Shown: in pieces, positions 10,396-62,047 of the stretch
Layout: every line of letters starts with the position of its first letter
Position numbering within the stretch: position 1 is the stretch's first letter
Virus record (IMG/VR): IMGVR_UViG_3300017971_000001
Location: 181,277 to 245,276 of that record
DNA: 64,000 nucleotides
Strand: one strand, 5' to 3'
Position numbers and translations under genes: made by a program
The notes under the pieces: generated by a model
The model's input: the letters and a program-made list of their open reading frames with translations, nothing else
Database searches by the model: none
What the model was told of the DNA's origin: nothing

Positions 10396-10809
10396 CTAGC
10401 GATTCAGCCGCTCGAAGAGCTCGTCCGGATCATTGAGAACTCGTTCTGCGGACTCGTAGGGGCTGAGGATATCGAGGTCTCCGTCCCATTGGGACTGGGC
10501 CAGCAGGACCTTGCCCAGCATGAGGTCGAAGGACTCGACCTCCCACCCCAGTTCCTCTTCAACGACTTCCCAGGGAGCGTCCTGCATTTCCTCGCCGGCG
10601 TAGTCCTTGAAAAAAGTGTTGACGTGGTCCAGCCAGTCCTGGGGATTCTCTCCACCCCAGACCTGGAGCTCTCCCCCCGCGTCACGGTAGTTAACCAGCA
10701 GGCGAGGCCTGAGGTCGAACTGAGCAAGGAACTCAAGCAGGAGACCTGGTTCGTTGCGTAGGATCGCGCTAGCGCGACTCAGGATCTCGTCAGGACTCAT
10801 GCGGCTCAC
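10396..10809 (-). CDS. Acidic hypothetical protein
   Basis: GTGA coupling to the upstream gene. Confidence 0.7.
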   Translation of the reverse strand: MSRMSPDEILSRASAILRNEPGLLLEFLAQFDLRPRLLVNYRDAGGELQVWGGENPQDWLDHVNTFFKDYAGEEMQDAPWEVVEEELGWEVESFDLMLGKVLLAQSQWDGDLDILSPYESAERVLNDPDELFERLNR

Positions 10810-11920: not shown

Positions 11921-12366
11921 TGGATCTCCGGGTGTTCGTTGTCCCACCATTGGACCTGGAATTCCCAGTCGTCGTAGACCAACTCGTCGTCGAGGTCGTA
12001 GGGGAAGCTATTGAAGTCAATGTCCCCGTGTCTTTCAACGTACTCTTTCGCGAATCTGAGCACTTCGCGAGCCTCTCTGGACGAGAAGCCGCCGATCGTG
12101 TTGGCGTAAGCGTAGTCGACGACCTGATAGGCGCGCCCTCCGTCCCAGGACTCGATCTCCTCGATCTCGAAGCGGCCGTCCGGAGGCCGGAAACCTCGCC
12201 GCTCGCGGTAGTCGGGCGGAAGGTAAACGATTCGGCTGCGAACCTGGTGCGCCTTGTCCCATTCGTCCTGACGTTCGAGTTCGAGCGCATACGCTTCTCC
12301 GAGCTCGCGCGATCGATCGCCGGCGAGCCATTGGCGCTCCAAGTTACGCAGGCGCTTGTCGCTCAA
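11917..12366 (-). CDS. Module protein (SDKRLRNLERQWLAGD)
   Basis: TTG start at 12366 overlapping the upstream TGA; acidic C-terminus. Confidence 0.7.
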   Translation of the reverse strand: MSDKRLRNLERQWLAGDRSRELGEAYALELERQDEWDKAHQVRSRIVYLPPDYRERRGFRPPDGRFEIEEIESWDGGRAYQVVDYAYANTIGGFSSREAREVLRFAKEYVERHGDIDFNSFPYDLDDELVYDDWEFQVQWWDNEHPEIQ

Positions 12367-14885: not shown

Positions 14886-15030
14886 GGTCGTCCTTGGGTT
14901 CGTCGTGAATGAAGGATTGGCAGGAAGGGCACCACAGCAACCACAATCGGGACCCGCTCTCCTTCTCCCAAGCTGGCTTGAGCTCGGGCTTGAATCCGCA
15001 GGCGTCGCAGGGCTCGAAAAGGGGGATCAT
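14872..15030 (-). CDS. 52 aa zinc-ribbon protein (below the ORF-track cutoff)
   Basis: MIPLFEPCDACG..WCPSCQSF; ATGA overlap with the 15027 stop. Confidence 0.65.
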   Translation of the reverse strand: MIPLFEPCDACGFKPELKPAWEKESGSRLWLLWCPSCQSFIHDEPKDDHEQS

Positions 15031-16904: not shown

Positions 16905-17380
16905 GCGTAGTCGAGCTCCGTCACGGGCCAGCTTGCGTAGCACGCATTGCAGCTGATCCAGTCAGCCGGCCCTGCGTCGTCCGCGCTCTCGAACAGGCCA
17001 GTGACGTAGAGCACTCCGTCTTCGGCCTCACCCGCTTCTGCGAAGCGTAGTTCGTAGCTGCAGAGGCTGAAGCCCGCGCCTTCGATCTCGTGACCGCGGG
17101 GGCACTCGGTCACACTCTTGTGATTAGGGAACCAGCCAGCATGCGGCTCACCTCGCTGCTGCCAGGGTCGCGTGGCGTTGGCGAGCAGTAGATTCCGAGC
17201 TATGCGGGAGCAGACTTCAGGGGGCAGGGCGCCCTGCAGCCAGCGAATGTTCGCCTCGTCAGCCATGAACTCGGGGGTGAGGGCTCCTGTCCGCAGGAGC
17301 TCTTGGTACAGAAGGGGTCCTGCCTCGGGGTCGCCCTCGGCCACCCGGCGCTCCAGTTCTCGTAAGCGTCGATCGCTCAT
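16901..17380 (-). CDS. Module protein with C-terminal zinc ribbon (paralog A)
   Basis: MSDRRLRELERRVAEGDPEA; CPRGH..CNACYASWP. Confidence 0.8.
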   Translation of the reverse strand: MSDRRLRELERRVAEGDPEAGPLLYQELLRTGALTPEFMADEANIRWLQGALPPEVCSRIARNLLLANATRPWQQRGEPHAGWFPNHKSVTECPRGHEIEGAGFSLCSYELRFAEAGEAEDGVLYVTGLFESADDAGPADWISCNACYASWPVTELDYA

Positions 17381-24487: not shown

Positions 24488-24991
24488 CTAGAAGCCGGGC
24501 GGGTGGGCAATGTCGTGCAGCTTGTAGGGAGGCAGCACGAGGCTACCGCCCTTGGTCTTGCCGCCGAGGAGCTTGGCGGCGACGGCGGGGTTGCTCCGCG
24601 TCTTCCGCTTCTTGCTCGTCTTCTTCTTGGCCTTCTTGCGCGTCGTCTTCTTGCGGGCGGTCTTCTTCTTGGTCGTGCGCTTCTTGGTCGTGCGCTTCTT
24701 CTTGGCCTTCTTGCGCGTCGTCTTCTTCTTGGTCTTCTTCTTGGTCGTCCGCTTCTTGCGCGTCGTCTTCTTCTTGGTCTTCTTCTTGGTTGTGCGCTTC
24801 TTCTTGGCCTTCTTGCGCGTCGTCTTCTTGCGCGTCGTCTTCTTGCGCGTCGTCTTCTTGCGCGTCGTCTTCTTGCGGGCAGTCTTCTTGCGGGCAGTCT
24901 TCTTGGTGGTGCGCTTCTTGGTCGTGCGCTTCTTGGTGGTGCGCTTCTTGGTGGTGCGCTTCTTGGTCGTGCGCTTCTTACGGGCGGCCAT
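24488..24991 (-). CDS. Histone H1/Hc2-like Lys-rich DNA-binding protein
   Basis: About 25 pentapeptide KK(R/K)TT, RKKTT and KKTAR repeats, then RSNP and a short C-terminal segment. Confidence 0.85.
   Translation of the reverse strand: MAARKKRTTKKRTTKKRTTKKRTTKKRTTKKTARKKTARKKTTRKKTTRKKTTRKKTTRKKAKKKRTTKKKTKKKTTRKKRTTKKKTKKKTTRKKAKKKRTTKKRTTKKKTARKKTTRKKAKKKTSKKRKTRSNPAVAAKLLGGKTKGGSLVLPPYKLHDIAHPPGF
24595..24985. repeat. Degenerate 15-nt tandem repeats encoding the Lys-rich tract
   Basis: Units such as cttcttggtcgtgcg and cttcttgcgcgtcgt. Confidence 0.85.
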
Positions 24992-24993
24992 GG

Positions 24994-39228: not shown

Positions 39229-39531
39229 ATGGATCGACAGCAACCCTACACCCCGTGGGTCGAAGCGCCTACGGGCTTGACGGTTCCGCCTCGGCAGCTG
39301 CCGGCGGCGCACGTCAACCAGTTGAGCAATCCGCGCCTGCTCGAGCAGCAGCGCGGCATGGCCCAATTGGCGGTAGGTGCTGCTGGATTCCTCCTCGCCG
39401 GCTACCACGGCTACCGGCGGAACGACTCCTACCTCTGGGGCCTGCTGTGGGGTCTCGGCGGATTCACTTGTCCTGTGGTGACGATTCCGATCGCCATTTC
39501 GCAGGGTTATGCCAACCCACTCAAGGGGTAG
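39229..39531 (+). CDS. Small two-TM membrane protein
   Basis: LAVGAAGFLLAGYHG and LWGLLWGLGGF. Confidence 0.72.
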   Translation: MDRQQPYTPWVEAPTGLTVPPRQLPAAHVNQLSNPRLLEQQRGMAQLAVGAAGFLLAGYHGYRRNDSYLWGLLWGLGGFTCPVVTIPIAISQGYANPLKG

Positions 39532-39533
39532 TC

Positions 39534-41039
39534 ATGCTCAGCTTCAACGAGCTCCAGGGCTTTGCCCAGGCCCACTCTGGTGACTACCGGTTCGGGCTTG
39601 ACGGCCGGAAGAAGGCGTGCTGCAGCAGCTGCGCGCACAACGGTCCGTGTGAAGGCGACAGCCACCAGCACGGGCTCGGGCGTCCGATCGATATCAACGA
39701 CTGGAAGAAGTGGATTCGTCACGAAGAAGCCGACACCATGCCGCCTGGGTTCCCTCCCCCCGCCCGTAGCTTCAGCCCGGCCTTCTCGGGACTCCGTGGC
39801 GCTACGGTCCTTACAGGCGAAGGGGATATGGACGATCCTCTGGACGCGCCACCGCTCGGGTACAAGTACGTCCAGACCACCAAGCCAAACACGACGGTCA
39901 TGGCGAAGCCCATGGGCGTTGTTCCGAAGCAGAGGCGGCGCGACGTCACGCGCATGATCGAGGAGCTCGAGTTCCTCGCGGCGACCCCCGGCGTCCACCC
40001 TCGCGCCCTCGCTTCCAAGATCTGGCAGGCGCGCAAGGCGCTCATGGAGAGCCAGGACTGGAGCTACGCCAGCTACAGCAATCCGCGCATGCGCTACGAC
40101 AGCAAGCGCGATCTGGAGGCGCGCCTTGCCTCGGTCGAGCGAGTCCTGGGTGTGGGCGACGTCAGCCCCAAGACCTTCGCGTTCTTCTACGGCATGGGCG
40201 GTCTGGGCAGGTGGCAGGGCCAGCAGGATCCGATCAAGAAGCTCGCGCAGTGCATTCAGGGGGCGATCTGCTTCCCGAAGGGCTACTGCTGCCCGTCTGG
40301 GACGCACTTCGACGAGCCCTACTACGACGACCCGCTCTACTTCGATCAGGGCTATCCCGAATACCCTGAGTACGGATACCCGGAGACCGGCGATCCTCGC
40401 CTTCCGCCGCCCATGGGCGACCCGCGTCAACCCCCTCCCTTCTTCGAGGAGACGTGGGGCGAGCCGCGTCGTCCGGGTGAGACCTATATCCCCGGACCCA
40501 AGTTGACCGAGCGCGGCCCCGTTACCTCGATCCCGGGCGCTCCGATCACGAGCATTCCTGGCGGATCGATCGGACCCGCCGGCGCCATTTCCACCGGCGG
40601 TGGAAAGATCGGACCTGCGAACGCTGGCCTGATCGCTGCGGGCGGGGTCGCTTCCGGTGCCGCGGCATCCATGCCCAACTCGGGCGCCGGTCCTGGCTCG
40701 ATCCTTCCTGGCGGAACGAAGACTTCGACTTCGACGGGCGGATCGCTTTCGGTGGACGAGGCGGTCAAGGCAGTCTCCATGCCGAATCAAAAGAAGTCCG
40801 TTCAGCTGCTCAAGCCAGGCACGGGAATCCTTTCGCGCCCGTATGTCGGCGCGCCCGAGCTCGTGCAGACGGGCCCTTCGGCTCAGGACTTTCAAGAAGC
40901 AGAGCGTCAGCGCCGCGCCGCTCGTCCCGGTTGGGGCGGAGGCGACGGCGGCGGAAGCATGGTCTCCCTGGGAGGCCTCTCTGCCCTGCAGCACAGCATG
41001 AACGCGGCCCGCATTGCGGCTCGCCGCCGGCGGAGGTGA
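39534..41039 (+). CDS. Cys/Pro/Gly-rich putative virion protein
   Basis: ATG 39534; CCSSCAHNGPC, MGGLG, CIQGAICFPKGYCC; Arg tail. Confidence 0.75.
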   Translation: MLSFNELQGFAQAHSGDYRFGLDGRKKACCSSCAHNGPCEGDSHQHGLGRPIDINDWKKWIRHEEADTMPPGFPPPARSFSPAFSGLRGATVLTGEGDMDDPLDAPPLGYKYVQTTKPNTTVMAKPMGVVPKQRRRDVTRMIEELEFLAATPGVHPRALASKIWQARKALMESQDWSYASYSNPRMRYDSKRDLEARLASVERVLGVGDVSPKTFAFFYGMGGLGRWQGQQDPIKKLAQCIQGAICFPKGYCCPSGTHFDEPYYDDPLYFDQGYPEYPEYGYPETGDPRLPPPMGDPRQPPPFFEETWGEPRRPGETYIPGPKLTERGPVTSIPGAPITSIPGGSIGPAGAISTGGGKIGPANAGLIAAGGVASGAAASMPNSGAGPGSILPGGTKTSTSTGGSLSVDEAVKAVSMPNQKKSVQLLKPGTGILSRPYVGAPELVQTGPSAQDFQEAERQRRAARPGWGGGDGGGSMVSLGGLSALQHSMNAARIAARRRRR

Positions 41040-41047: not shown

Positions 41048-42079
41048 ATGAAGCGACGCATTCGTAAGAACCCTTGGTTCAGCCCTCCGGCCATGCAGTA
41101 CGTGGCGCGGTTTACTCCGCCCCTCATGCTCAACCCGCCTCGGAGCAATCCGCGGGTCTACGGCGACTACGGCCCGCCGGCGCTGCCCCCACGGCGCAAC
41201 CCTCGGGTCTATGGTGACTACGGCCCGCCGGCGCTGCCCCCGCGGCGCAACCCTTCCCAGGTCTACTCGATCAGCTGCGACGGCGAGCACGTCGACTTGA
41301 TCCGCGCGACCTCGCCCGGCAAGGCTCGCTCGATCGCCTCCAAGCGTCACGGCATTCCCTTTCTCGAGCTCGACGTCATGGCGACCGGGGCGGCGAACCC
41401 TCCCCGCGCTCGCAAGATCGACCTCAAGGGAGACTTCCCGCTCATGAACAAGCGCCACCGACGGCGCCCGCGTTACTCGACCTATCGGACTGAAGACGTC
41501 GAGCGGCACATGCGCTACCCGCGCCGGCGTCGCTTCGATCCCGAGCCGGTCGGATACCGGGATAACCCCTGGGTCACCATGTACGGCCCGCGGCACACCG
41601 GCCCCTTCCAGCGCAAGCGCGACGCGCGGGACTTCGCTGACACGCGTCGGGGGCGCTACGGCGAGCACCACTCGGTTCACCGGCTCTACTCGCCGGGCGG
41701 GCAGTATGGTCGTCGCTCGCCGCATGTTCCGATCAAGCGTCGGCGCAACCCGGCCTACGGCGACTACAGTCCGCCTGCGGCCCCCTACGGCATGAATCCC
41801 CGGGGCCGGGGCGGGAAGCCTTCGCTTCACAGGGCGGCCGCCGCTGCTTCTCGTCGCGCTGCTCGGAAGATCGACGAGATCCTCAGCCAGATCGCCGAGA
41901 TTCCCAGTCTCACGATCCGTGATATCGAAGACGTGGTCGACGGCCTCCTCCACGTTCACGCTGGCCGAATTCTGCGCAAGCACAAGCTCTCGAGGTCGCG
42001 TCACAGCGATATCGAGCAAATGATCTCGGACGCGCTTTCGTATCGCAGCGAGGCCTACAACGAGATCATTCTCCGCTAA
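41048..42079 (+). CDS. Arg-rich NP-repeat protein (putative genome-condensing core protein)
   Basis: Nine NP dipeptides including RKNP, RSNP and three RRNP. Confidence 0.8.
   Translation: MKRRIRKNPWFSPPAMQYVARFTPPLMLNPPRSNPRVYGDYGPPALPPRRNPRVYGDYGPPALPPRRNPSQVYSISCDGEHVDLIRATSPGKARSIASKRHGIPFLELDVMATGAANPPRARKIDLKGDFPLMNKRHRRRPRYSTYRTEDVERHMRYPRRRRFDPEPVGYRDNPWVTMYGPRHTGPFQRKRDARDFADTRRGRYGEHHSVHRLYSPGGQYGRRSPHVPIKRRRNPAYGDYSPPAAPYGMNPRGRGGKPSLHRAAAAASRRAARKIDEILSQIAEIPSLTIRDIEDVVDGLLHVHAGRILRKHKLSRSRHSDIEQMISDALSYRSEAYNEIILR
41147..41254 (+). repeat. 51-nt tandem duplication (NPRVYGDYGPPALPPRR x2)
   Basis: NP codons at 41147, 41198 and 41249; a third degenerate copy near 41748. Confidence 0.85.
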
Positions 42080-42142
42080 TGGATCGGGTCGTCCGCCGAG
42101 CAGTTCGCTACTTGCTCCTAGAGAGCCTTGAGGGGTAAAACA

Positions 42143-43492
42143 ATGCACCGACGCGAATACAACCCCCGCTACTCGTTCTCCGAGCCGCGCCCAAACCCTG
42201 ATTGGCACCCGGGCGGTGGCATGCGGATCGGGGGTCGGTATCGCCCTGGCAGCGGACGCTTCCATGCGCACCGCGGATCGGGCTATCGCCACGGCGGCGG
42301 CCGTCGCTACGACGGCGAGTACTACCCCGGCGGTGGCTACTACCCCCAAGCCAATCCTGCGGTCGCCGGTATTCAGATCGGCGACAAGGTCATGCCGGCC
42401 TCGCGCTTCCATGCGCGCCGCTGCCCCTTCGTGCGCGGCCGCGTCGTCGACCTGAAGCACAAGAAGTACGGCGACCTCGCTCGCGTCGAGACAGAAGACG
42501 GTCGGATCGTGACCGTCACGCTCGACACGATCAAGCGCTGCGGCATGCGCACGCGCAGCAACCCGCGGCGTGTCCGTCGCAACTGGGTCCCCAGTCACTG
42601 GAACGAGTGCGAGTCCTGCGGCAACCGGTGCTATCCGCACGAGCGCCTGTGCGTCTACTGCGAGCAGGCTGAGTTCGATCGCCTGCCGGGTCATATGACC
42701 GAGCTCAAGCGTTGCCCGAAGTGCGACCGCTTCGCATGCCTCGGCGGGCGTCACTGCAAGCCTCGGCCTCGCGGTTCTGGCCCCGGCCCCTACCTCGAGA
42801 ACCCTTACGCCTCCAGGGCGAAGGCGAAGGAACTCGCGCGCCTGGTCGAGTCCAAGCCAGGAATCCGCAAGATCGCTCGCCGGACCTACAGCCACGGCAC
42901 GGTCCCCCGCGAGGTCGAGTGCGAACTCGAGCCCCTCGGGCCGTCCATGCTGCTCGGTAGTCGTCGCTACGGGCGGACCAAGGGTGGCATGGTCGACTCC
43001 TACGCCAAGGAGTTCGACTTCCCTGCCCCCAACGAAGAGGAGCGGAAGTTCGTTGTCTGCAAGGGCGCGAACGAAATCGAGGCTGTCGCTGACGCATTGC
43101 CTCCGGGCCGCGGCTTCAAGAAGCGGCTTGAGTCCGCGCTCTCGACGAAGCGCTTCCAGGGCAAGCTCCCCGTGCAGAAGCGAATCGATCGAATCATGAA
43201 GGGCGGCATGCTGACGCAGCGTCAGACGACTGCGTTCTTGAAAAGCACGGACGCTGATCGCCTCTACGAGTTGGCGGAGCTCAAGCGCCGGGTCGACCGC
43301 GTCTTCTACCCGAGTATGCGGAAGCTGCTCATGCACGAAGAGGTTTCGGAGAAGCTGAGGCCCGCCCCGGCCCGCAAGAAGCGTTCGACCAAGAAGAAGG
43401 CTGGCAAGAAGGTCAGCAAGAAGAAGGTCGCCGCCGCTAAGAAGAAGGCCAAGAAGAAGACGACCAAGAAGCGTCGCCGGCGGGGTGCTTAA
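42143..43492 (+). CDS. Basic NP-segmented protein with SH3/KOW-like and Cys-finger modules and Lys tail
   Basis: NP junctions separate a Gly/Tyr region, IQIGDKV..GRVV..VTV, CESC/CVYC/CPKC and a KK-rich tail. Confidence 0.78.
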   Translation: MHRREYNPRYSFSEPRPNPDWHPGGGMRIGGRYRPGSGRFHAHRGSGYRHGGGRRYDGEYYPGGGYYPQANPAVAGIQIGDKVMPASRFHARRCPFVRGRVVDLKHKKYGDLARVETEDGRIVTVTLDTIKRCGMRTRSNPRRVRRNWVPSHWNECESCGNRCYPHERLCVYCEQAEFDRLPGHMTELKRCPKCDRFACLGGRHCKPRPRGSGPGPYLENPYASRAKAKELARLVESKPGIRKIARRTYSHGTVPREVECELEPLGPSMLLGSRRYGRTKGGMVDSYAKEFDFPAPNEEERKFVVCKGANEIEAVADALPPGRGFKKRLESALSTKRFQGKLPVQKRIDRIMKGGMLTQRQTTAFLKSTDADRLYELAELKRRVDRVFYPSMRKLLMHEEVSEKLRPAPARKKRSTKKKAGKKVSKKKVAAAKKKAKKKTTKKRRRRGA

Positions 43493-44775
43493 TGGCCGCT
43501 CGCAAGAAGCGCGCCAAGCGCGCCAAGAAGAAGGTTCCGGGGCCGCGTCGGTATCACATTGAGCGCGCTATGGGCTGGGTCGATCACGGACTCGCTCACC
43601 CGGGCGAGCACGAGCACGCTTTGCGCGAGGCGCACGATCACCTGGTCCATGCCAAGCAGGCAAGGCGGAACCCTCGCCGTCTACCCGTGCGCAGCAACCC
43701 CATGCTGGCAGTTGTTGGCAATCCGCCTCGGCGTCGTCGCGTTCGCCGCAACCCCATGCTCGCGATCGTCGGGAATCCGCACGAAGAGGAAATGACCCCG
43801 GGCGCCATGCGCCGCCGGATCACCGAACTCAAGCTCGAGCTTGACGACGCGAAGTACTTCAAGCACTCGCCTATGCGGATCGCAGGACTCGAAGACGAGA
43901 TCGCCGAACTCGAAGACGCGCTTGACGCTGCAGAGGAACAGTTCGAGCGTAGGTCGCGCGCTGGACTTTCTCGCTCTCGCGTTGAAGACGAGCGCCGCCG
44001 TGAGCGCGAGCGCTACATGCGCGATCGCCGGCGCAACCCGCGTCCTGAAGTTCACCCGCTCGCCTACGAAGCGCGCCGCCGTTACCACGAAGACCTCATG
44101 GCAGGCCATGGAGACGCCGCTGAATACTGGCGCGGCCAGGCCGGGGCGTTCTTCACGGACGCGGTTCACCCCGACTACATGCGCGAGATCTACGAACTCG
44201 AGCAGCGCGAACTCGAACGCCGGAACCGAAACGCGACTGGCAAGCGCGCCAAGAAAAAGTCTGGCCGCAAGGGTGGCAAGAAGTCCAAAAAGCAAGTTGC
44301 AGGGCCAGGCGGACGGGATAGCTTGAAGAAAGAGGGCAGGAAGGTTCGCAAGAATCGGACTGCAGGGAAGTCCAAGAAGGCGAAGCCAAAACTCAAGCGC
44401 TACACGCTCGAGGAAGCCAGGAAGAAGTTCGAAGGATTCGACGAAGCGCTGAAGGCCTACAAGCGTTTTCACAAAGCGAATCCGAGCCACGTCGACGTCT
44501 ACGAAATTGACGACGGCAAGCCTGGCAAAACGGTTGACCGAGTTCATGCAGCACTCCACCGGACAGTCGAAACCAACTACCTCGTGCCTGACGGCTGGGA
44601 GTCCAACAAGAATGGCTCCCTCTGGAAGCACGAGCACGTTGAAGGCTTCAGCCTCGACAACCCCGTTGGCGAACCTGATCCGGAAGACTTCCCGCTCGAA
44701 GTGCTCGACCCAGCAACCGGCACGACTCGCAAGTTCGGCGGTCGCTTCCGCGTCACGACGTGGTGGTACGACTGA
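43492..44775 (+). CDS. Basic NP-repeat protein
   Basis: Eight NP; duplicated R(S/R)NPMLA(V/I)VGNP; TAATG overlap. Confidence 0.8.
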   Translation: MAARKKRAKRAKKKVPGPRRYHIERAMGWVDHGLAHPGEHEHALREAHDHLVHAKQARRNPRRLPVRSNPMLAVVGNPPRRRRVRRNPMLAIVGNPHEEEMTPGAMRRRITELKLELDDAKYFKHSPMRIAGLEDEIAELEDALDAAEEQFERRSRAGLSRSRVEDERRRERERYMRDRRRNPRPEVHPLAYEARRRYHEDLMAGHGDAAEYWRGQAGAFFTDAVHPDYMREIYELEQRELERRNRNATGKRAKKKSGRKGGKKSKKQVAGPGGRDSLKKEGRKVRKNRTAGKSKKAKPKLKRYTLEEARKKFEGFDEALKAYKRFHKANPSHVDVYEIDDGKPGKTVDRVHAALHRTVETNYLVPDGWESNKNGSLWKHEHVEGFSLDNPVGEPDPEDFPLEVLDPATGTTRKFGGRFRVTTWWYD

Positions 44776-44787
44776 GCGAGGTGCGCT

Positions 44788-46641
44788 GTGTATCTGATCC
44801 CTGTTCTCAATCCGCCGCCCAGCGCCATGCCCCTCGCTGGGACCAAGACGAAGCGCAAGCCCAAGCGGGCCGCGCCCAAGAAGACCAAGTCGGCCGGGAG
44901 GAAGTCCGTGGCTAAGAAGAAGGTTCGCAAGAACAGCAGCCGCAAGCGCACGAGCAGCTACTCCGGTGGCCGCGCTCAGCGCAAGCGCTACCCCAGCGGC
45001 AAGCGCCGCAACCTGACCTGGGTCGAGGCTGCGCGATCGTCTGGCGCGGTCTACACGCCGAACTCGCTCATGACCAAGAAGGACGGCCGCGGTCGGCTGA
45101 AGTTCGTCCCGGTCACGAGCGGCAAGGTCGGTAAGCCCATGTCGAAGCAGGACGCGCTCGCGGCCAAGCGCCCGGTCGTCGGCTTCCTACCCAAGTGGCT
45201 GATCGACTTCTGGTACGACTCGGGCGCTGCGGACATGAAGACCGCGCGTCAGCAGAAGAGCAAGAAGTACAAGGACGCGGTCCAGTACTTCAACGCGGCC
45301 CAGAAGGCGCTCGCCGAGCAGCGGAAGAAGCGCGGCACCAGCTGGAAGCGCGCGACCCAGTACAAGACCAAGGGCCGCGGCAAGAACAAGAAGAAGGTCC
45401 GGGTCCCGGACTTCGAGATCCTGGACGACGGCTCGGTCAAGTTCCGATCGGGCCGTGGTCCCAAGACGTCAATCACCCTGTTTCGAGGCTTTGCTCCGTC
45501 GGAGGTGCAACAGCGGCACCTCATTGAAGGCGGTTTCGCGGGCAAGGCTGGACCTGGAGGAGGTCGCGTGAAGCTGAACCGAAAGCGGAAGCGCCGGGCG
45601 AAGGTTCGCAAGAACCCGGCGCGTAAGAAGAAGGCCGTGAGCAAGAACAAGCCACGGCGTAGCAAGAAGAAGACGAAGAGTCGGAAGAAGAGCCGCCGTC
45701 GCGCGGTCCTGAACAACCGGCCCAAGTCCAAGCGTCGGAAGAAGGCGACGAAGCGCAAGGCCGCGCGCCGCAAGAGCACGAAGCGTCGGAAGAATCCTGC
45801 GCGCAGCCGCAAGCGGCGCGTGCGGAAGAACCCGGCTCGCAAGTCGCACTCGCGCAAGCGTCGTCGTCGCAAGAGCAGCGCTCTGAGCCGGGTTCGCCAG
45901 AACCCCATGGGCGCGACCAAGAAGAACCCCATGGGCGCGCTGAAGCAGTACCTCGACAAGCTGCAGACCGCTTCGCCCTACGTCACTGGCGCTCACCTCG
46001 TGATCGGCATGGGCGTCAGCGGGCTCTTCTGCGGCGGTCTCCGTCAGTTCCCCGTCGTCGGGCGGATCTTCAGCCTTCGTGGTCGTTACCTGGGCGCCGC
46101 CGGCCGTTTCGCCGGTTGCCTCGGCGCGGCTTCGCTGGCTGGCCTGACCGGAACCCTGCTCGAGCGCACCCTGGGCAAGAACGTCAAGTTCCTCCAGAAC
46201 GCTGGCGGCAACTTCTTCGTGGCTGGTGTCGCCCTCGCGGTCGGCAACCTCCTCCTCGAGCTCATTCCCGGCGCCTCGTCGATCCTGCCTGGGATCAGCA
46301 ACCCCCGCGGCATGCGCACCATGCGGCACATGTCCATGGCGGCTCCGGCCGGCGAAGAGGGCATGGGCAGCTACGGCAGCAGCGTCCTGAGTCCCGAGGA
46401 CCTGGTCGCTGGCGAGTCGAGTGCCCGTCTGACCAACGAGTTCCACGGCATGAGCGACTTCCTGGAGCTCAGCGGCATGGGCTCGTCGGGCGGTCAGCCG
46501 ATTCCGATCGAGGACCTGCGCGGCTACCCCGGCTGGTATGGCGGTGGCAACTCGATCTCGGGCATGGGCGACTACATGGAGCTCAACCCGACCGCTCCCC
46601 TCGTCACCGACGGGTTCAACCCCGGCACCGAGAACTTCTAG
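44788..46641 (+). CDS. Very basic NP-repeat protein with hydrophobic segment and C-terminal G(M)G motifs (core-precursor-like)
   Basis: Three RKNPAR, RQNPMG, KKNPMG; LSGMG and ISGMG near the C-terminus. Confidence 0.8.
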   Translation: MYLIPVLNPPPSAMPLAGTKTKRKPKRAAPKKTKSAGRKSVAKKKVRKNSSRKRTSSYSGGRAQRKRYPSGKRRNLTWVEAARSSGAVYTPNSLMTKKDGRGRLKFVPVTSGKVGKPMSKQDALAAKRPVVGFLPKWLIDFWYDSGAADMKTARQQKSKKYKDAVQYFNAAQKALAEQRKKRGTSWKRATQYKTKGRGKNKKKVRVPDFEILDDGSVKFRSGRGPKTSITLFRGFAPSEVQQRHLIEGGFAGKAGPGGGRVKLNRKRKRRAKVRKNPARKKKAVSKNKPRRSKKKTKSRKKSRRRAVLNNRPKSKRRKKATKRKAARRKSTKRRKNPARSRKRRVRKNPARKSHSRKRRRRKSSALSRVRQNPMGATKKNPMGALKQYLDKLQTASPYVTGAHLVIGMGVSGLFCGGLRQFPVVGRIFSLRGRYLGAAGRFAGCLGAASLAGLTGTLLERTLGKNVKFLQNAGGNFFVAGVALAVGNLLLELIPGASSILPGISNPRGMRTMRHMSMAAPAGEEGMGSYGSSVLSPEDLVAGESSARLTNEFHGMSDFLELSGMGSSGGQPIPIEDLRGYPGWYGGGNSISGMGDYMELNPTAPLVTDGFNPGTENF

Positions 46642-46856: not shown

Positions 46857-47495
46857 ATGACCATGCGCGTTGTCCCCATTCCCGCGATCGGCGCCGTTGG
46901 CAGCCGCCCCCGCAAGGAGCCGATCTACGACACTGAGGGTTGGGCTCCGGCCGTCCCCCAGCCGTCCGAGATCGTCACCTTCGTCAACTTCTCGGGCTTC
47001 AACACTGGTGGCCTGTCGCTGCAGAAGTCCTTCGGCCGCGACACCAATCTGCAGGGTCAGAATGGTCTGCCCGCTGCACACCACCACTACTGGTATGGCC
47101 TGCGTGTCAAGATCCGCTCGCTCGACGCGGACCTCGGCACGGCCGCCAACGTCGTGGTGTTCGAGGAGATCAACCGGATCCGTGAGCTCGGCTTCACCCA
47201 GTTCCGGTTCGCCAGCAGCGAACTGATCACCGTGCAGGCGGACGAGGCCCCCAGCGGCACCGGCCCCGCCTACGCGAACACGACCCACTCGGCCGCGACG
47301 ATCCTGTCGCTCCCGAGCGGCGTGCCCACCCGCGGAAACGCGAAGGACGTCACGATCAGCGGCCGCCCGGTCGAGATCGTGGCCCTCGAGGCCTTCCGTG
47401 TCGTCTACGGCACCCCCACCGGGATCACCCCGACCGTGTCGCTGTACTGCAGCGTGATCCTCGAGGGTCTGCTGCTGCGCGGAATCACCGGCTAG
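46857..47495 (+). CDS. Single jelly-roll-like capsid protein (candidate major capsid protein)
   Basis: AGGAG RBS, ATG 46857; PIYDT..RDTNLQGQNGLP..YGLRV..LEGLLLR beta-rich pattern; strong terminator after it suggests high expression. Confidence 0.62.
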   Translation: MTMRVVPIPAIGAVGSRPRKEPIYDTEGWAPAVPQPSEIVTFVNFSGFNTGGLSLQKSFGRDTNLQGQNGLPAAHHHYWYGLRVKIRSLDADLGTAANVVVFEEINRIRELGFTQFRFASSELITVQADEAPSGTGPAYANTTHSAATILSLPSGVPTRGNAKDVTISGRPVEIVALEAFRVVYGTPTGITPTVSLYCSVILEGLLLRGITG

Positions 47496-49383: not shown

Positions 49384-50826
49384 ATGCCCGCTCACACGTC
49401 CACGGTCAGCCAGGGCTGGGGAGCCACGCACACCTGCGCCTACTGCCATGGCTTCGGCAGCATTCCGCCCCTGATTCGCGGCAGCGACGGGCGAATGCAT
49501 ATCAATCCCGACTACGAAATGGTGAAGCGGTTCCACCTCGCCGCTGAGCCGTTCGGGGAGACGCTCGGACCTGGCGAGTCGCGCACGTTCACGTTCACGG
49601 TTCCCGCCGAGGAGGAAGGTCTGGGCGACCTGCTGGTCAACGAGTTCTTCGCGCTCTACGAGCCCGAGGGGATCCGCAACGTCTTCGTCGACTTCCTCAA
49701 CCTGCAGACCGATCGCCTGTTCCAGAACGCGCCCGTCCCCACGACGCTGATCATGGGCAACGCGCACCTCAACACCTGCCTGCCCTGCTGTTTCCTGATC
49801 CAGGCGACCAACAGCCTGCAGGTTCGCGTGCGCAACGAAGAGTCGACCGACATTCAGGTTCGTCTCGTCGCCCGCGGCAAGCGCTTCCTGACTCGCGACC
49901 ACGAACTCCGCGCGCGCATGCTCCAGTACTGGAACATGCTCCCCAGCTACAGCTACTTCCTCACACTCGACGAAGAGGAGGTTGTGGTCCCTGCCGGAGA
50001 GACCGTCAGCGCGACCATGAAGGTTCCTGGCCACGGAGACTTCGAAGTCAAGTGGCCGCGCTGTGAAGTGCTGAACGCGGCGACGGGCGCGCAGGAGAAC
50101 GCCAACGGCATTCTGGTCACCGTCGCCGAAGGGATCGGTCGTCAGTGGCAGAGTGATCCGCTCCCGCTCGGCGCGTTCGTCGCGACACCGACGCTCGACG
50201 TGGCCGGGTTCCCGGGCGGGATCTACCGCGCTGCCAGCGCTGGCCACTGCCCCAGCTACACCCAGCTGTTCAAGCGAAACACGTTCGTCCGTCACACGTT
50301 CGAGAACACGAGCGGCACCGACCTGATCGTTCGTCTGACCTACGCTGGCTGCTTCCACCAGGTCGACGAGTGCCCGCCCGGACGCTCGATCGATCGGATC
50401 CGCAGTCTCGAGCCGACGATCGGTCCCATGCTGATCCCGCAGGGCGACTACTGCGCCCCGCAGCAGCAGTACTACCCCGAGGAGCCCTTCTACAACGAAG
50501 AGCCGATCTATCAGTCCCCTCAGGCTTCGGGCGGAATGCAGCCGCCTGCTCAGCAGCCGGGCGGGAGCGCGATCTTCACGACGGTCCCTGGCGGAGCGGG
50601 CTCGGTCCAGGCTGGCGGCCCCAGTAGCTACGTCCCCAAGTACTACGAGGCCGGCGGCGGCGGCATGGCCGTCCCTAAGGCTGAGATCGCCAAGGCGCAC
50701 GGCCTCAAGCCCGGCCAGGTTTACGCTCCCGGCTTCCGCGGAATGCAGGGCATGGGCGCTGGCCCTGTGATCCGCCGCGGGCCCTACGTCTGGGATCCGA
50801 TCGCTCGGACCTGGAAGCGAGGCTAG
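49384..50826 (+). CDS. Double jelly-roll-like capsid protein, paralog 1
   Basis: Two similar beta-rich halves each ending ..L..(R/A)G(K/C)(R/F); NAPVP..IMGN..LP..LQVRVRN; C-terminal MQGMG. Confidence 0.7.
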   Translation: MPAHTSTVSQGWGATHTCAYCHGFGSIPPLIRGSDGRMHINPDYEMVKRFHLAAEPFGETLGPGESRTFTFTVPAEEEGLGDLLVNEFFALYEPEGIRNVFVDFLNLQTDRLFQNAPVPTTLIMGNAHLNTCLPCCFLIQATNSLQVRVRNEESTDIQVRLVARGKRFLTRDHELRARMLQYWNMLPSYSYFLTLDEEEVVVPAGETVSATMKVPGHGDFEVKWPRCEVLNAATGAQENANGILVTVAEGIGRQWQSDPLPLGAFVATPTLDVAGFPGGIYRAASAGHCPSYTQLFKRNTFVRHTFENTSGTDLIVRLTYAGCFHQVDECPPGRSIDRIRSLEPTIGPMLIPQGDYCAPQQQYYPEEPFYNEEPIYQSPQASGGMQPPAQQPGGSAIFTTVPGGAGSVQAGGPSSYVPKYYEAGGGGMAVPKAEIAKAHGLKPGQVYAPGFRGMQGMGAGPVIRRGPYVWDPIARTWKRG

Positions 50827-50829
50827 TCC

Positions 50830-52326
50830 ATGACGTTTCCAGTCGAACCGCCGGTGATCCTCGAGTACGGCATGGGGGACTGCCGGACGTTCATGAACAT
50901 TCCGCCCCTCGTCCATTGGGACGACGGGTCGACGTGTATCAACCCTGACTTCGACGCGGTGACCAAGTTCCACCTCGCCGCCAAGGGGATCGAGTTCGCG
51001 GACCGGAGTCTCGTGACTAACGTCACGATCAACCCCGGCGAGACGGTCGACTTTCAGCTGACCGTCGAGCGTGAGGAGAACGGCCTCGGGCACCTTCTGA
51101 TCAACGAGCTCCTGATTCTGACGAACCCTGAGGGCGCGACAGACCTGACGGTTCAGATCAAGTCGATCCAGGGCGACAGCACCTACATGAACGGGCCGAC
51201 GCCGATCACGCACGTGTTCGGCAACGCGCACCTCAACTGCTGCCTGCCCTGCCCGATCATGCTGTATCCGAATCAGACCTTGATCCTCAAGGTGACCAAC
51301 AATGAGGCCTTCTCGGTCTCGACTCGGATCACGGCCCGCGGCAAGCGGTTCATGCCCTACCACAACATGAGCCTGATCTCCGAGCTCGAGCGCTGCTGGT
51401 CCATGAACCCGAGCTCGCCCTACTTCGCGAGCTTCGACCAGGGCCCGATCACGGTTCCTGCCAATGGAACCGCGCAGGGGCAGATTACGATCCCCGGGGG
51501 CGGCTGGTTCCAGATCGAGTACATCCGCAGCACGCTCGGCTCAAGCGACTTGATCGTTGACGTGACCGAGGGTCGGATCGGCAAGCGCTACATGAACCGC
51601 CCGGTCCGACTGGGCCTCTATGCCACCGAGGACCTGCAGATCACTGGATTCCCGGGCAACCTGTACCGCGCAGCCTCGGCCTGCCACTGCCCGCCGGTCC
51701 AGCAGTTGGTTCGCGGAAACATTCGCATGATCCACGACTTCACCAACCCGACCGGCGCTCCGATCACGGTGAACCTCACCTATGTCGGCTGCTTCCACAA
51801 GGGGGTTGATATCTGCCCGCCGCAGAAGGACCTCGACCGCGTTCGCCGGCACCAGCACATGATCGACTGCTGCGGAGGCGAGCTCTTCCTGGACCTCGCA
51901 GACGAGGAGCCGTGCCCGCCCGCCTCTGTGCCCGCGTTCACTTCGGAGTATCTGAAGTTTGCGGAGGACGGCGAGACCCCCTTCCCACGTCCGCTTGAGC
52001 AGAACATGCCTGCGCCTGAGCCCGTGCCTCAGGTCAAGCAACTGTGGCAACCGGGGGACCACGGCGCGCCGATCTCGCCCATGCAGCTTCCGCCCGATCA
52101 GGCGTACGCGATCAACCATGCTGGCCGCCTCGCGGTCGTGCAGATCGATTCGCAGCGCCGCCCGATTCGCTACGTGCGTCCGGAAGAGCTCCCTATGGGC
52201 ATGGACGCCTCCTACTCCATGTATCGTGCCAACTTTGGGGATCAGGACCCTGAGTTCCGCAAGTGGCTCGCCTCCCAGGGGGGTGGGGTCAGCGGACTGG
52301 GTCAAGGTGAATGGGAGGCACTCTAG
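50830..52326 (+). CDS. Double jelly-roll-like capsid protein, paralog 2
   Basis: Colinear with 49384 (INPD..KFHLAA, GNAHLN.CLPC, RGKRF, Y.GCFH); C-terminal VSGLG. Confidence 0.7.
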   Translation: MTFPVEPPVILEYGMGDCRTFMNIPPLVHWDDGSTCINPDFDAVTKFHLAAKGIEFADRSLVTNVTINPGETVDFQLTVEREENGLGHLLINELLILTNPEGATDLTVQIKSIQGDSTYMNGPTPITHVFGNAHLNCCLPCPIMLYPNQTLILKVTNNEAFSVSTRITARGKRFMPYHNMSLISELERCWSMNPSSPYFASFDQGPITVPANGTAQGQITIPGGGWFQIEYIRSTLGSSDLIVDVTEGRIGKRYMNRPVRLGLYATEDLQITGFPGNLYRAASACHCPPVQQLVRGNIRMIHDFTNPTGAPITVNLTYVGCFHKGVDICPPQKDLDRVRRHQHMIDCCGGELFLDLADEEPCPPASVPAFTSEYLKFAEDGETPFPRPLEQNMPAPEPVPQVKQLWQPGDHGAPISPMQLPPDQAYAINHAGRLAVVQIDSQRRPIRYVRPEELPMGMDASYSMYRANFGDQDPEFRKWLASQGGGVSGLGQGEWEAL

Positions 52327-61303: not shown

Positions 61304-62047
61304 GTGAGAGCATTCAATCTTCCATGTCCTCCGGACACGCCGCTGGGCCAAGAGATCCTCGCTCTCGCGCGCAGCGAGGATCCGCAAGACCGCGAGCGGT
61401 TGTTTCAACTGCTCGACGACGCGGGCGCCGAGATCGACGTGCCGGATCAAGGCGAGGTCGCGATCGGCGGCAGGTCGTGTGAATTCTCGTTCACGCACCA
61501 GGTCCTTGAGGTCGAGGGCGTTCTGGACGAAACCTTTTGCCGCGACGTGATCGAGCTCGCCGAATCCAAGGGCGTCTGGAGTGACAGCACGCAAGTCCGG
61601 GGCGGCGGTCCGGTCTACCAGGACGAAAATCGCACCAGCCAGTATCAGCGCTTGCGCGATATCTGCTTTCCTGACTACGCCGACCACTTGCAGCAAAGGC
61701 TGATCGAGGTCGCCAAGTTCTACCAGGCTCGCAACAAGTACCTTGTGTTCAAGGAGCAGGAGATCAGCTGGGAGCTCCTGCGCTACCAGCCCGGCGACAA
61801 GTTCGAGACGCACGTCGACATGATCGCCAACAGCAGCTGGAAGGCGCGGACGCTGACCTTGCTCGCCTACCTGAACGACGACTTCAGCGGAGGGGAGACG
61901 GAGTTCGTCAAGCCGGGCCCTGAGGTGACCGTCCAACCGAAGCGCGGGAAGGCGATCGCCAGCCCGCCGTTCTGGACACACCCGCACCGAGGCTGCCCGC
62001 CGACCAGCGGCAGTAAATACGTCGTCCTTGGGTGGCTGTACGCATGA
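61304..62047 (+). CDS. 2OG-Fe(II) oxygenase (prolyl 4-hydroxylase-like)
   Basis: RYQPGDKFETHVD, YLNDDFSGGETEF, THPHRG, GSKY. Confidence 0.88.
   Translation: MRAFNLPCPPDTPLGQEILALARSEDPQDRERLFQLLDDAGAEIDVPDQGEVAIGGRSCEFSFTHQVLEVEGVLDETFCRDVIELAESKGVWSDSTQVRGGGPVYQDENRTSQYQRLRDICFPDYADHLQQRLIEVAKFYQARNKYLVFKEQEISWELLRYQPGDKFETHVDMIANSSWKARTLTLLAYLNDDFSGGETEFVKPGPEVTVQPKRGKAIASPPFWTHPHRGCPPTSGSKYVVLGWLYA

What the first reader, a model, noticed from the sequence alone, without database searches (positions are those of the whole stretch)
41048..46641. Four consecutive highly basic proteins punctuated by about 31 NP motifs
Seen by hand count: 9, 5, 8 and 9 NP dipeptides, mostly as (R/K)xNP, far more than composition suggests. 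They delimit short repeats and small domains, and the genes lie directly upstream of the capsid genes. The same tag marks accessory proteins at 10806, 12363, 15027, 18756, 21669, 24488 and 62044. Known: adenovirus packages basic core precursors (pVII, mu) that are proteolysed. Inference: (R/K)xNP is a second virus-wide code, for core condensation, cleavage into protamine-like peptides, or cargo recruitment into the capsid.
Basis: partly seen in the sequence, partly recalled or inferred. Interest (0 to 1): 0.87.

Follow-up and report, generated by a model that had tools for sequence, protein, structure and literature searches.

The report
Asn-Pro-punctuated basic virus core proteins
Four very basic proteins encoded beside the capsid genes of an undescribed large virus carry seven times more Asn-Pro pairs than chance, a trait kept in over 150 distant relatives; the pairs most likely frame short docking and DNA-binding peptides, and cleavage at them is possible but untested.

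Summary
The four ORFs carry 9, 5, 8 and 9 NP dipeptides: 31 observed against 4.4 expected. 52% of all Asn are followed by Pro, while SP, TP, DP and GP sit at expectation. Six synonymous hexamers encode NP, so selection acts on the protein.

The enrichment is conserved at 5-7x in the syntenic proteins of 10 or more related metagenomic viruses and in 133 further distant representatives, including one from a 38% GC contig. The capsid proteins and other neighbours sit at 1.0-1.1x.

The genes lie upstream of a probable double jelly-roll capsid protein on a 245 kb contig.

NP has almost no fixed context. It brackets conserved short peptides: NP-WFSPPALQYV, NP-LLAIVG-NP and an N-terminal LLIPVL-NP. 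It also sits in the centre of polybasic repeats such as KARKNPRRK.

The third protein type joins these motifs and a conserved C-terminal domain to swappable N-terminal domains.

My best reading: these are virion-internal proteins, and NP turns frame their docking peptides and DNA-binding units.

"Virus-wide code" is overstated, because the rest of the proteome shows only 1.6x. Cleavage, Pro hydroxylation and cargo recruitment remain untested.

The parts
41048..42079 (+). p1: 343-aa basic protein (pI 11.0, net +36), 9 NP. It has a conserved N-terminal motif x7-NP-WFSPPAMQYVARF..NPP and NP-bracketed 17-aa repeats (RRNPRVYGDYGPPALPP).
   Evidence: the motif is conserved in L002, L003, L004, L019, L024 and L026
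41069..41140 (+). Motif A (p1 residues 8-31): NP-WFSPPAMQYVARF...NPP, an N-terminal short linear motif.
   Evidence: the same motif lies 5-10 residues from the N-terminus in 6 relatives and is internal in 2
41141..41254 (+). 51-nt tandem repeat (2.2 copies) encoding the NP-bracketed 17-residue unit of p1.
42128..43492 (+). p2: 454-aa basic protein (ATG at 42143; net +60), 5 NP. It has an RG/Y-rich N-terminus, a small beta domain, Cys-rich zinc-ribbon-like segments and a lysine-rich C-terminal tail.
   Evidence: residues 13-83 match an internal part of L002 p1
43492..44775 (+). p3: 427-aa basic protein, 8 NP. In order: two copies of RxNP-MLA[VI]VG-NP, a coiled coil, a conserved helical core (VHPLAYEARRRY...WRGQAGAFFT), a basic linker and a conserved C-terminal alpha/beta domain.
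43672..43780 (+). 54-nt tandem duplication encoding the two NP-MLAVVG-NP / NP-MLAIVG-NP motifs. This region is predicted disordered (pLDDT < 50).
44788..46641 (+). p4: 617-aa protein (pI 11.7, net +116), 9 NP. In order: N-terminal LIPVLNPP, a basic region, a globular domain, a polybasic NP array, a hydrophobic or transmembrane region and an acidic C-terminus.
44794..44817 (+). p4 N-terminal motif [LI][LI]IPVLNP[PG].
   Evidence: NP is 100% conserved in the aligned homologues
45595..45942 (+). p4 polybasic array with RKNPAR units and NPMGATKKNPMGALK. The homologue consensus is [KS][AV][RK][KA]NP[RK][RK][RK].
46201..46287 (+). p4 transmembrane-like hydrophobic segment (residues 472-500).
   Evidence: Kyte-Doolittle mean > 1.5 over 19 residues
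46345..46638 (+). p4 acidic C-terminal region with repeated GMxD[FYW][LMV]E[LF] motifs and a conserved ...E[NST]F end.
46857..47495 (+). 212-aa protein, the most conserved gene of the module (64-89% identity among relatives). Function unknown; a candidate partner for the conserved docking peptides.
49384..50826 (+). Probable double jelly-roll major capsid protein.
   Evidence: AF2 pLDDT 77. Foldseek top hits are iridovirus, PBCV-1, STIV and faustovirus capsid proteins and giant-virus and STIV capsid proteins in BFVD. NP is at 1.0x in 50 homologues.
50830..52326 (+). Paralogue of the capsid protein (40% identity over 332 aa).
39531..41039 (+). Conserved syntenic gene directly upstream of the block. 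It starts with MLSFNELQGFAQ, and NP is at expectation.
24488..24991 (-). 167-aa protamine-like protein made of (K/R)KKTT repeats. It ends in ...KTRSNP-AVAAKLLGG..., that is, the same basic stretch, NP, then a hydrophobic peptide.
   Evidence: GC3 0.96
10806..11696 (-). Accessory protein starting MSYRH-NP-SDERLRDM, a member of the NP-DERLR module set.
12363..14051 (-). Accessory protein with an internal RRRRRKRR-NP-ERGDRRLRELERAAAAGD module.
15027..16943 (-). Accessory protein with RRARE-NP-NKGDERLRELERAAQTG and PRK-NP modules.
61304..62047 (+). 2OG-Fe(II) oxygenase (PF13640, prolyl-4-hydroxylase-like), also present in a relative (L018). A candidate modifier of Pro; speculative.

Best explanation
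The four genes encode internal virion proteins (nucleoid, membrane or inner capsid) of an undescribed lineage of large viruses with a double jelly-roll capsid protein. In these proteins the dipeptide Asn-Pro works as structural punctuation: a rigid Asx-Pro turn or cap that sets off short functional peptides within otherwise disordered, highly basic chains. Two kinds of unit are framed. (i) Hydrophobic or aromatic docking peptides, namely NP-WFSPPALQYVARF-NP in p1, RxNP-LLAIVG-NP in p3, M-x-LLIPVL-NP at the p4 N-terminus, and RSNP-AVAAKLLGG in the protamine-like ORF 24488. I infer that these tether the proteins, and whatever domain is fused to them, to a conserved capsid or membrane component during assembly. 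(ii) Polybasic units of 11-17 residues with NP at the centre (KARKNPRRKAR), which I infer bind and neutralise the packaged DNA in the way SPKK or AT-hook turns do in histone tails. p4 joins such an array to a membrane segment and acidic C-terminal motifs, so it could link genome, membrane and shell. p3 joins the motifs and a conserved C-terminal domain to interchangeable N-terminal domains, so it could carry cargo. Shown: the enrichment, its specificity for Asn-Pro, its deep conservation, the motif classes, the architecture and the capsid neighbourhood. Inferred: virion location, docking, DNA binding and cargo delivery.
For: The enrichment is specific to NP: 31 against 4.4 expected, with SP, TP, DP and GP at expectation. 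Selection is at the protein level, since six synonymous hexamers are used. It is conserved in the syntenic block of 9 viruses (191 against 33.8), and the same block is seen in L024 and L026. It holds in 23 p3 homologues (6.4x), 13 p4 homologues (6.1x) and 133 further representatives at <= 50% identity (4.8-6.6x, 723 against 124), including a 38% GC contig (12 against 2.1). Capsid homologues (1.0x) and other neighbours (1.1x) lack it. The context around NP is weak (R at -2 is 2.6x over background, at about 29% of sites), whereas the bracketed peptides are the most conserved stretches: NPLLAIVGNP is identical in 15 or more homologues that are 40-60% identical overall. AF2 leaves the p3 motif region disordered (pLDDT < 50), as expected for a linear motif that folds on a partner. 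NP lies within the first 13 residues in 22 of 51 block proteins, against 7.5 +/- 2.5 expected. Short p3 homologues start exactly at xRxNPLLAIVGNP, while long ones carry GP88 (PF17338), HTH arrays, zinc-finger or unknown Cys-rich domains in front of it. p4 has a net charge of +116, a transmembrane-like segment and conserved acidic C-terminal motifs. Small membrane proteins and a probable double jelly-roll capsid protein flank the block.
Against: There is no experimental or proteomic evidence that any of these proteins is in a virion. No partner has been identified and no complex could be modelled. In the AF2 model of p3, NP residues are not helix N-caps. A purely structural role does not obviously explain why Asn-Pro is used so exclusively rather than Ser/Thr/Asp-Pro. 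One lineage (L013/L014/L020) has lost most NPs from the p4 basic array (2 against 1.1 expected), so NP is dispensable for that part. No known DNA-binding or capsid-binding family matched.
Confidence: 0.45

Rival explanations
1. NP marks proteolytic processing sites. Either a viral or host protease acts there, or the Asn-Pro bond cleaves itself through Asn cyclisation. The precursors would be cut into protamine-like basic peptides, targeting peptides would be removed, and cargo domains would be released, as in adenovirus core maturation or the head maturation of large phages.
For: NP is strongly over-represented near N-termini (22 of 51 against 7.5) and at module boundaries. Gene fission and fusion points coincide with xRxNP. 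Asn-Pro is a documented self-cleaving bond in capsid and secretion proteins: aquareovirus VP5 and reovirus mu1 at Asn42-Pro43 (PMC9148132), and FlhB/YscU at Asn|Pro-Thr-His (PMC3207474). In a distant AT-rich relative, the gene just upstream of the NP-rich protein has four HExxH zincin-like repeats (phrog_87 metallo-protease, E = 4.6e-12). This would explain the exclusive use of Asn.
Against: No protease family was detected in the 64 kb window or in the blocks of the GC-rich relatives. The structural proteins do not avoid NP (1.0-1.1x; 5 NP in the capsid paralogue) and the rest of the proteome is slightly enriched, not depleted. There is almost no extended consensus for a protease to read. Known Asn-Pro autocleavage needs a folded catalytic context, whereas these sites are predicted disordered.
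Confidence: 0.22
2. NP is the recognition motif of the virus-encoded 2OG-Fe(II) oxygenase (prolyl-4-hydroxylase-like, 61304-62047). The enzyme would hydroxylate the Pro (or modify the Asn) in the basic proteins and so tune DNA or capsid binding.
For: A PF13640 oxygenase is encoded in the window and, at 39% identity, in relative L018 downstream of the capsid module. A bare dipeptide with little context fits a modifying enzyme. From my own knowledge, a chlorovirus prolyl-4-hydroxylase acts on short Pro-containing basic repeats.
Against: This rests on co-occurrence only. The enzyme was seen in 2 genomes because the other loci do not reach that far. There is no evidence on its substrate.
Confidence: 0.07
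3. All NP sites serve DNA binding only, as an Asn-Pro analogue of SPKK or AT-hook minor-groove turns. There would be no docking or targeting role.
For: The polybasic NP arrays of p4 and its homologues; lysine- and arginine-rich tails in p2 and p3, and ORF 24488.
Against: About half of the NPs sit in non-basic, hydrophobic or aromatic contexts (AAANP, FFNP, GNP, LSNP). The most conserved NPs bracket hydrophobic peptides. The L013 lineage lost NP from the basic array but kept the N-terminal LLIPVLMNP. No SPKK or RGRP motif is present.
Confidence: 0.1
4. An artefact of composition, of recent tandem duplication, or of a DNA-level motif.
For: Two tandem duplications carry NP units. The genome is GC-rich and Asn is rare.
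Against: Shuffles keep composition. The duplications explain 3-4 of 31. Six synonymous hexamers are used. The same enrichment is seen in a 38% GC relative and in 133 clusters at <= 50% identity.
Confidence: 0.02

Closest known systems
Adenovirus core proteins (pVII, V, pre-mu) and pVI
   Same: Highly basic proteins encoded directly upstream of a double jelly-roll capsid gene. N-terminal peptides may tether them to the shell. The presumed role is genome condensation.
   Different: No sequence or Pfam similarity. The adenain consensus is not enriched. No adenain-like protease was found in the window. The proteins are much larger, carry folded domains and a membrane segment, and the punctuation is Asn-Pro.
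SPKK / S-T-P-X-X turns of linker and sperm histones, and AT-hooks
   Same: A short turn-forming dipeptide ending in Pro sits within polybasic repeats that bind DNA (my own knowledge of those motifs). The p4 arrays look like an Asn-Pro version.
   Different: SPKK and RGRP are absent. Ser-Pro and Thr-Pro are not enriched. Half of the NPs are in non-basic contexts.
Capsid-targeting propeptides and inner-body or internal proteins of large tailed phages (T4 internal proteins, phiKZ-like inner body)
   Same: A set of head-internal proteins shares a very short motif that is over-represented in them. N-terminal peptides direct incorporation and cargo enzymes are carried into the capsid (my own knowledge).
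   Different: Those systems belong to HK97-fold phages, and the motif is the cleavage site of a known prohead protease. Here the capsid protein is double jelly-roll-like, and neither a protease nor cleavage is shown.
Asparagine peptide lyases with an Asn-Pro scissile bond (reovirus mu1 / aquareovirus VP5; FlhB/YscU)
   Same: The same dipeptide is the functional site in capsid and secretion proteins (PMC3207474, PMC9148132).
   Different: In those proteins it is a single site in a folded, homologous catalytic context. Here there are 5-16 sites per protein in disordered regions, and there is no homology.
MuF / SPP1 gp7-type virion proteins fused to variable domains
   Same: A conserved virion-incorporation part is joined to interchangeable domains (my own knowledge). 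p3 shows this architecture.
   Different: No homology and a different virus realm. In p3 the conserved part is C-terminal and the variable part N-terminal.
Asn-Pro turn repeats of the Plasmodium circumsporozoite protein
   Same: Disordered repeats are organised by Asx-Pro turns (my own knowledge).
   Different: Those are regular tetrapeptide repeats in a parasite surface protein. Here the spacing is irregular (peaks at 8 and 14-17 residues) and the contexts are diverse.

Membership tests
Adenovirus-type core proteins (pVII / V / mu) | Sequence membership in the Pfam families for adenovirus core proteins | tested here: not met
   No Pfam, PHROG or NCBIfam family matches p1-p4 at E <= 0.01-0.1.
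Adenovirus-type core proteins (pVII / V / mu) | Very basic proteins encoded next to a double jelly-roll capsid gene | tested here: met
   pI 10.1-11.7 and net charge +32 to +116. The capsid model matches iridovirus, PBCV-1 and STIV capsid proteins.
Adenovirus-type core proteins (pVII / V / mu) | Processing by an adenain-type cysteine protease at its consensus sites | tested here: not met
   The consensus occurs 5 times against 3.5 in shuffles. No peptidase family was found among about 70 window proteins. The other 181 kb of the contig was not examined.
SPKK / AT-hook DNA-binding repeats | [ST]P[KR][KR] or RGRP cores in basic repeats | tested here: not met
   0 occurrences of either in p1-p4; SP and TP are at expectation.
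SPKK / AT-hook DNA-binding repeats | Binding to the DNA minor groove | not testable with these tools
   Needs EMSA, footprinting or NMR with array peptides.
Asparagine peptide lyases (MEROPS N6, N7) | Asn-Pro bond at the functional site | tested here: met
   31 NP in the four proteins; precedents are in PMC3207474 and PMC9148132.
Asparagine peptide lyases (MEROPS N6, N7) | Homologous folded domain that positions the Asn for cyclisation | tested here: not met
   No family or structural match. The NP regions of p3 are predicted disordered.
Asparagine peptide lyases (MEROPS N6, N7) | Observed self-cleavage | not testable with these tools
   Needs recombinant protein and mass spectrometry.
Double jelly-roll capsid viruses (Varidnaviria-like) - context of the block | Major capsid protein with two jelly-roll domains | tested here: met
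   The AF2 model (pLDDT 77) has two beta-sandwich domains. Foldseek probability is 1.0 to SGIV, PBCV-1, STIV and Pithovirus capsid proteins, with modest TM scores of about 0.3.
Double jelly-roll capsid viruses (Varidnaviria-like) - context of the block | FtsK/HerA-type packaging ATPase | tested here: inconclusive
   No Walker A motif in any window protein. Only 64 of 245 kb were examined.
Virion cargo-carrier proteins (MuF-like logic) | Conserved incorporation module joined to interchangeable domains | tested here: met
   The p3 C-terminal domain lies at the C-terminus in most of the 150 listed proteins (231 reach E <= 1e-3), and these range from 63 to 1541 aa. The N-terminal parts include GP88, HTH arrays, zinc-finger-like and unknown domains.
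Virion cargo-carrier proteins (MuF-like logic) | Presence in the virion and delivery to the host | not testable with these tools
   The virus is uncultured; needs particle proteomics.

The most novel reading that the evidence does not exclude
Asn-Pro is a cleavage punctuation, either self-cleaving through Asn cyclisation or read by a dedicated protease. During maturation of a large double jelly-roll virus it would cut multi-module precursors into protamine-like DNA-condensing peptides, free the docking peptides and release the cargo domains. That would be a polyprotein-like maturation code based on a single dipeptide.
Probability: 0.2. Interest if true: 0.85.

Novelty: new variant of a known kind. 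Interest (0 to 1): 0.62.

Why it matters
Basic core proteins and short targeting motifs are known from adenoviruses and large phages. I know of no case where a bare Asn-Pro dipeptide is enriched 5-7x and kept across a superfamily of more than 200 protein clusters in viruses ranging from 38% to 75% GC. It gives a simple sequence signature for recognising the internal proteins of an uncharacterised virus lineage: contigs of 190-274 kb with a double jelly-roll-like capsid protein and almost no Pfam or PHROG matches. It also defines three or four sharply conserved peptides that can be tested directly for capsid docking, DNA condensation or cleavage. If the motifs prove to be incorporation tags, they would be a handle for studying how large membrane-containing icosahedral viruses load their genome-associated proteins and cargo.

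Tried and rejected
1. DNA-level motif: rejected, because six synonymous hexamers encode NP and it occurs almost only in frame.
2. Composition or duplication artefact: rejected.
3. Family assignment of p1-p4, the 212-aa protein and the capsid genes by Pfam, PHROGs and NCBIfam: no matches. tblastn of the capsid protein against 50,697 phage records: none.
4. Foldseek of the p3 model: nothing below E = 0.8. PDB sequence search with the 212-aa profile: nothing.
5. Scan of IMG/VR for the back-translated NPLLAIVGNP: two hits, both in a myovirus tail-sheath gene, so chance matches.
6. Protease search: no peptidase Pfam hit among the window proteins. HExxH occurs only in two small unrelated ORFs (19957-20523, 25419-25838), which have no peptidase family match, and in an acidic repeat. 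There is none in the blocks of the GC-rich relatives. A zincin-like repeat protein sits next to the distant AT-rich homologue only.
7. N-degron idea (cleavage after NP exposing L, F, W or Y for ClpS): the residue after NP is not enriched for these.
8. Helix N-cap idea: not borne out in the p3 model.
9. Homology between the HTH-rich accessory protein 18756-19955 and the HTH cargo of L004 p2: not significant (E about 0.08).
10. PRD1 as a control double jelly-roll phage: it has no comparable basic NP-rich proteins. NP totals 21 against 11.4, mostly in the receptor-binding protein P2.
11. Literature searches for a described large bacterial double jelly-roll virus of this kind, or for PF17338: nothing relevant.

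Full report
WHERE THE WINDOW COMES FROM. The window is the last 64 kb of a 245,276-bp metagenomic contig (IMGVR_UViG_3300017971_000001 = Ga0180438_10000045). It is 62-67% GC. Genes are dense, often overlap, and have a high GC3. Almost nothing matches Pfam, PHROGs or NCBIfam.

THE OBSERVATION. The four ORFs are 41048-42079 (p1), 42128-43492 (p2), 43492-44775 (p3) and 44788-46641 (p4). They are real coding genes: GC3 is 0.72-0.87 and homologues exist. They are strongly basic, with pI 10.1-11.7 and net charges of +36, +60, +32 and +116.

They hold exactly 9, 5, 8 and 9 NP dipeptides. That is 31 against 4.4 expected from composition. NP is by far the most over-represented dipeptide (z = 12.8; the next, KK, is 4.7). 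Each protein gives p <= 0.0008 in shuffles. Eighteen of the 31 are [RK]xNP. Fifty-two per cent of all Asn are followed by Pro, against 10% in the other 67 window proteins. SP, TP, DP, GP, QP and HP are all at expectation, so the signal is specific to Asn-Pro.

Six synonymous hexamers encode the dipeptide, and it occurs almost only in the coding frame. It is therefore not a DNA motif. Two recent tandem duplications (51 nt and 54 nt) explain only 3-4 of the NPs.

THE NEIGHBOURHOOD. The 480-aa product of 49384-50826 was modelled from 28 homologues (pLDDT 77). It shows two beta-sandwich domains. Its best structural matches are the major capsid proteins of Singapore grouper iridovirus, PBCV-1, STIV and faustovirus (probability 1.0, E down to 1e-6, TM about 0.3). 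In the viral library the best matches are giant-virus and STIV capsid proteins. It is a probable double jelly-roll capsid protein.

A paralogue follows at 50830-52326 (40% identity). Between p4 and the capsid gene lie two genes. One encodes a 212-aa protein that is the most conserved of the module (64-89% identity among relatives). The other is a LAGLIDADG-Mom fusion. Small membrane proteins lie upstream.

CONSERVATION. I fetched related contigs through capsid homologues, the 212-aa protein and p3/p4 homologues. All show the same order: conserved upstream gene, NP-rich proteins, the 212-aa gene, capsid gene(s).

- Nine viruses whose capsid proteins are 37-63% identical have 191 NP against 33.8 expected in the block proteins.
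- The 23 p3 homologues show 6.4x, and the 13 p4 homologues show 6.1x.
- Fifty capsid homologues show 1.0x, and 38 other neighbours show 1.1x.
- A profile search of 1.84 billion representatives found 231 proteins at E <= 1e-3. The 133 new ones among the best 150, each from a different 50%-identity cluster, carry 723 NP against 124 expected. The ratio stays at 4.8-6.6x down to the weakest hits.
- One of these lies on a 38% GC contig (12 NP against 2.1), so base composition is not the cause.

WHAT NP DOES IN THE SEQUENCES. The context around NP is weak: R at -2 is 2.6x over background (about 29% of sites), with S, K or R at -1 and Y, V or A at -3. In p1-type proteins NP follows AAA, FF, YP, GE and similar residues. 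The invariant element is therefore NP, not (R/K)xNP. Spacing between NPs peaks at 8 and at 14-17 residues.

What is conserved is what NP brackets:
(A) x5-9-NP-[WF]F[SA]PPxxQYVxxF..NPP, at or near the N-terminus of p1-type proteins in eight viruses.
(B) RxNP-LLAIVG-NP, identical in 15 or more p3 homologues that are otherwise 40-60% identical. It is duplicated in the window as NP-MLAVVG-NP and NP-MLAIVG-NP.
(C) M-x-[LI][LI]IPVL-NP-[PG], at the N-terminus of p4 in nearly all homologues.
(D) Arrays of [KS][AV][RK][KA]NP[RK][RK][RK] in p4, with 4-7 units per protein and partly aligned positions (60-88% conserved). One lineage has lost them.
(E) NP-x(1-4)-(G)DERLRELERAA..GD. This occurs in three 'accessory' proteins of the window (10806, 12363, 15027), in L003 p2, and at the N-terminus of distant family members.

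NP lies within the first 13 residues of 22 of 51 block proteins, against 7.5 +/- 2.5 expected.

ARCHITECTURE OF THE PROTEINS.
p3: AF2 gives a disordered NP-motif region (residues 56-98), then a coiled coil, a helical core, a disordered basic linker and a confident C-terminal alpha/beta domain. That domain has no structural match. Across the family the C-terminal domain lies at the protein's C-terminus, and total length ranges from 63 to 1541 aa. Short forms start exactly at xRxNPLLAIVGNP. Long forms put a variable domain in front: GP88 (PF17338), arrays of HTH domains, a Cys-rich enzyme-like domain or a zinc finger.

p4: in order, it combines motif C, a conserved globular domain, the polybasic NP array, a hydrophobic transmembrane-like region, and an acidic C-terminus with repeated GMxD[FYW][LMV]E[LF] motifs.

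p2: it has a lysine-rich, histone-tail-like C-terminus.

ORF 24488-24991 (minus strand): my crude gene caller had missed it. It is a 167-aa protamine-like (K/R)KKTT repeat protein ending in ...KTRSNP-AVAAKLLGG.

MOST LIKELY MECHANISM (inference; confidence about 0.45). These are internal virion proteins. Asn-Pro is a turn or cap that frames short linear modules in disordered basic chains. The modules are hydrophobic docking peptides (motifs A-C and the tail of ORF 24488) and polybasic DNA-binding units (D). The docking peptides would tether the proteins and their fused domains to a conserved capsid or membrane component. p4 could link DNA, membrane and shell, and p3 could act as a cargo carrier. 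The most conserved peptides call for a highly conserved partner, and the 212-aa protein is the obvious candidate. None of this is tested.

RIVALS.
(1) Processing at NP (0.22). For: motif positions at N-termini and at fission and fusion points, documented Asn-Pro self-cleavage in reovirus and aquareovirus outer-capsid proteins and in FlhB/YscU, and a zincin-like repeat protein next to the AT-rich homologue. Against: no protease was found in the window or in the GC-rich relatives, structural proteins do not avoid NP, there is no extended consensus, and the sites are disordered.
(2) Substrate of the conserved 2OG-Fe(II) oxygenase at 61304-62047 (0.07).
(3) DNA binding only (0.1). About half of the sites are in hydrophobic contexts, which argues against this.
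(4) Artefact (0.02).

THE 'VIRUS-WIDE CODE' CLAIM. Outside the block NP is 1.6x enriched, and [RK]xNP occurs 9 times against 3.2 expected (p about 0.006). Each listed accessory ORF has one or two sites. Three of them share module E, and ORF 24488 shares the basic-NP-hydrophobic layout. Some accessory proteins may therefore use the same modules. The signal is not proteome-wide, and single occurrences in proteins of 300-600 aa are weak evidence.

COMPARISON WITH KNOWN SYSTEMS. In logic the block resembles adenovirus core proteins, SPKK and AT-hook repeats, the targeting propeptides and internal proteins of large phages, and MuF-type cargo carriers. It is not a member of any of these:
- It has no homology to any of them.
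- The adenain consensus is not enriched, and SPKK and RGRP are absent.
- No Asn-lyase fold was found.
- PRD1, a classical double jelly-roll phage, has nothing comparable.
I found no paper describing this lineage or the motif.

VERDICT. I rate it a new variant of a known kind, with interest 0.62.

Noticed in passing
window 49384-52326; contigs of 190-274 kb (L024, L026): The window belongs to an apparently undescribed lineage of large viruses (contigs of 190,544, 245,276 and 273,580 bp). They have a probable double jelly-roll capsid protein, an adjacent 40%-identical paralogue, and almost no Pfam or PHROG matches. One relative is binned in a 'Deltaproteobacteria bacterium' MAG (JAJDAN010000066.1). 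The host is unknown.
   Followed up: partly
window 46857-47495; L014 6827-7123: The 212-aa gene is the most conserved of the module (64-89% identity). In L014 a group I intron interrupts it (Rfam RF00028, 67 bits, E = 1.3e-16). L013, L015 and L016 show similar insertions in the tblastn match.
   Followed up: partly
window 47571-49205: A LAGLIDADG homing endonuclease fused to a Mom-like domain lies between the 212-aa gene and the capsid gene. It is present at the same place in L013, L014, L020 and L024 and absent in other relatives, so it looks like a mobile insertion.
   Followed up: partly
window 46345-46638 (p4 C-terminus); 36544-37590 and 39531-41039 N-termini: A second short motif, GMxD[FYW][LMV]E[LF] or MxEL.GFAQ, recurs three times at the p4 C-terminus and at the N-termini of two other structural-module proteins and their homologues. 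It may be another assembly motif.
   Followed up: no
window 24488-24991 (-): This ORF encodes a 167-aa protamine-like protein made almost entirely of (K/R)KKTT repeats (GC3 0.96). The antisense ORF 24552-25055 (+) is probably spurious.
   Followed up: partly
window 61304-62047; L018 8382-9143: A 2OG-Fe(II) oxygenase (PF13640, prolyl-4-hydroxylase-like) is conserved in a relative. Among the small ORFs there are also single Pfam hits to PTH2 (the archaeal/eukaryotic type of peptidyl-tRNA hydrolase), RNase_T, a dual-specificity phosphatase and HIPIP. These make the host domain uncertain.
   Followed up: partly
window 27309-30008, 30100-30930, 31867-34080: Three long proteins rich in coiled coil. 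The first has an acidic HEDD-repeat N-terminus and a GGY/RGG low-complexity region. They may be scaffold or tape-measure-like proteins.
   Followed up: no
L028 4115-5650: In a 38% GC distant relative, the gene upstream of the NP-rich p3-like protein has four HExxH (HEIGHW) zincin-like repeats (phrog_87 metallo-protease, E = 4.6e-12). The repeats are separated by NP-started peptides.
   Followed up: partly
window 4338-4412: A single tRNA-Leu (anticodon AAG).
   Followed up: no
L025 (JAJDAN010000066.1, 89693-110066): The 190 kb relative holds a second, distant partial copy of the 212-aa gene (48% identity over residues 5-101), about 75 kb from the first.
   Followed up: no
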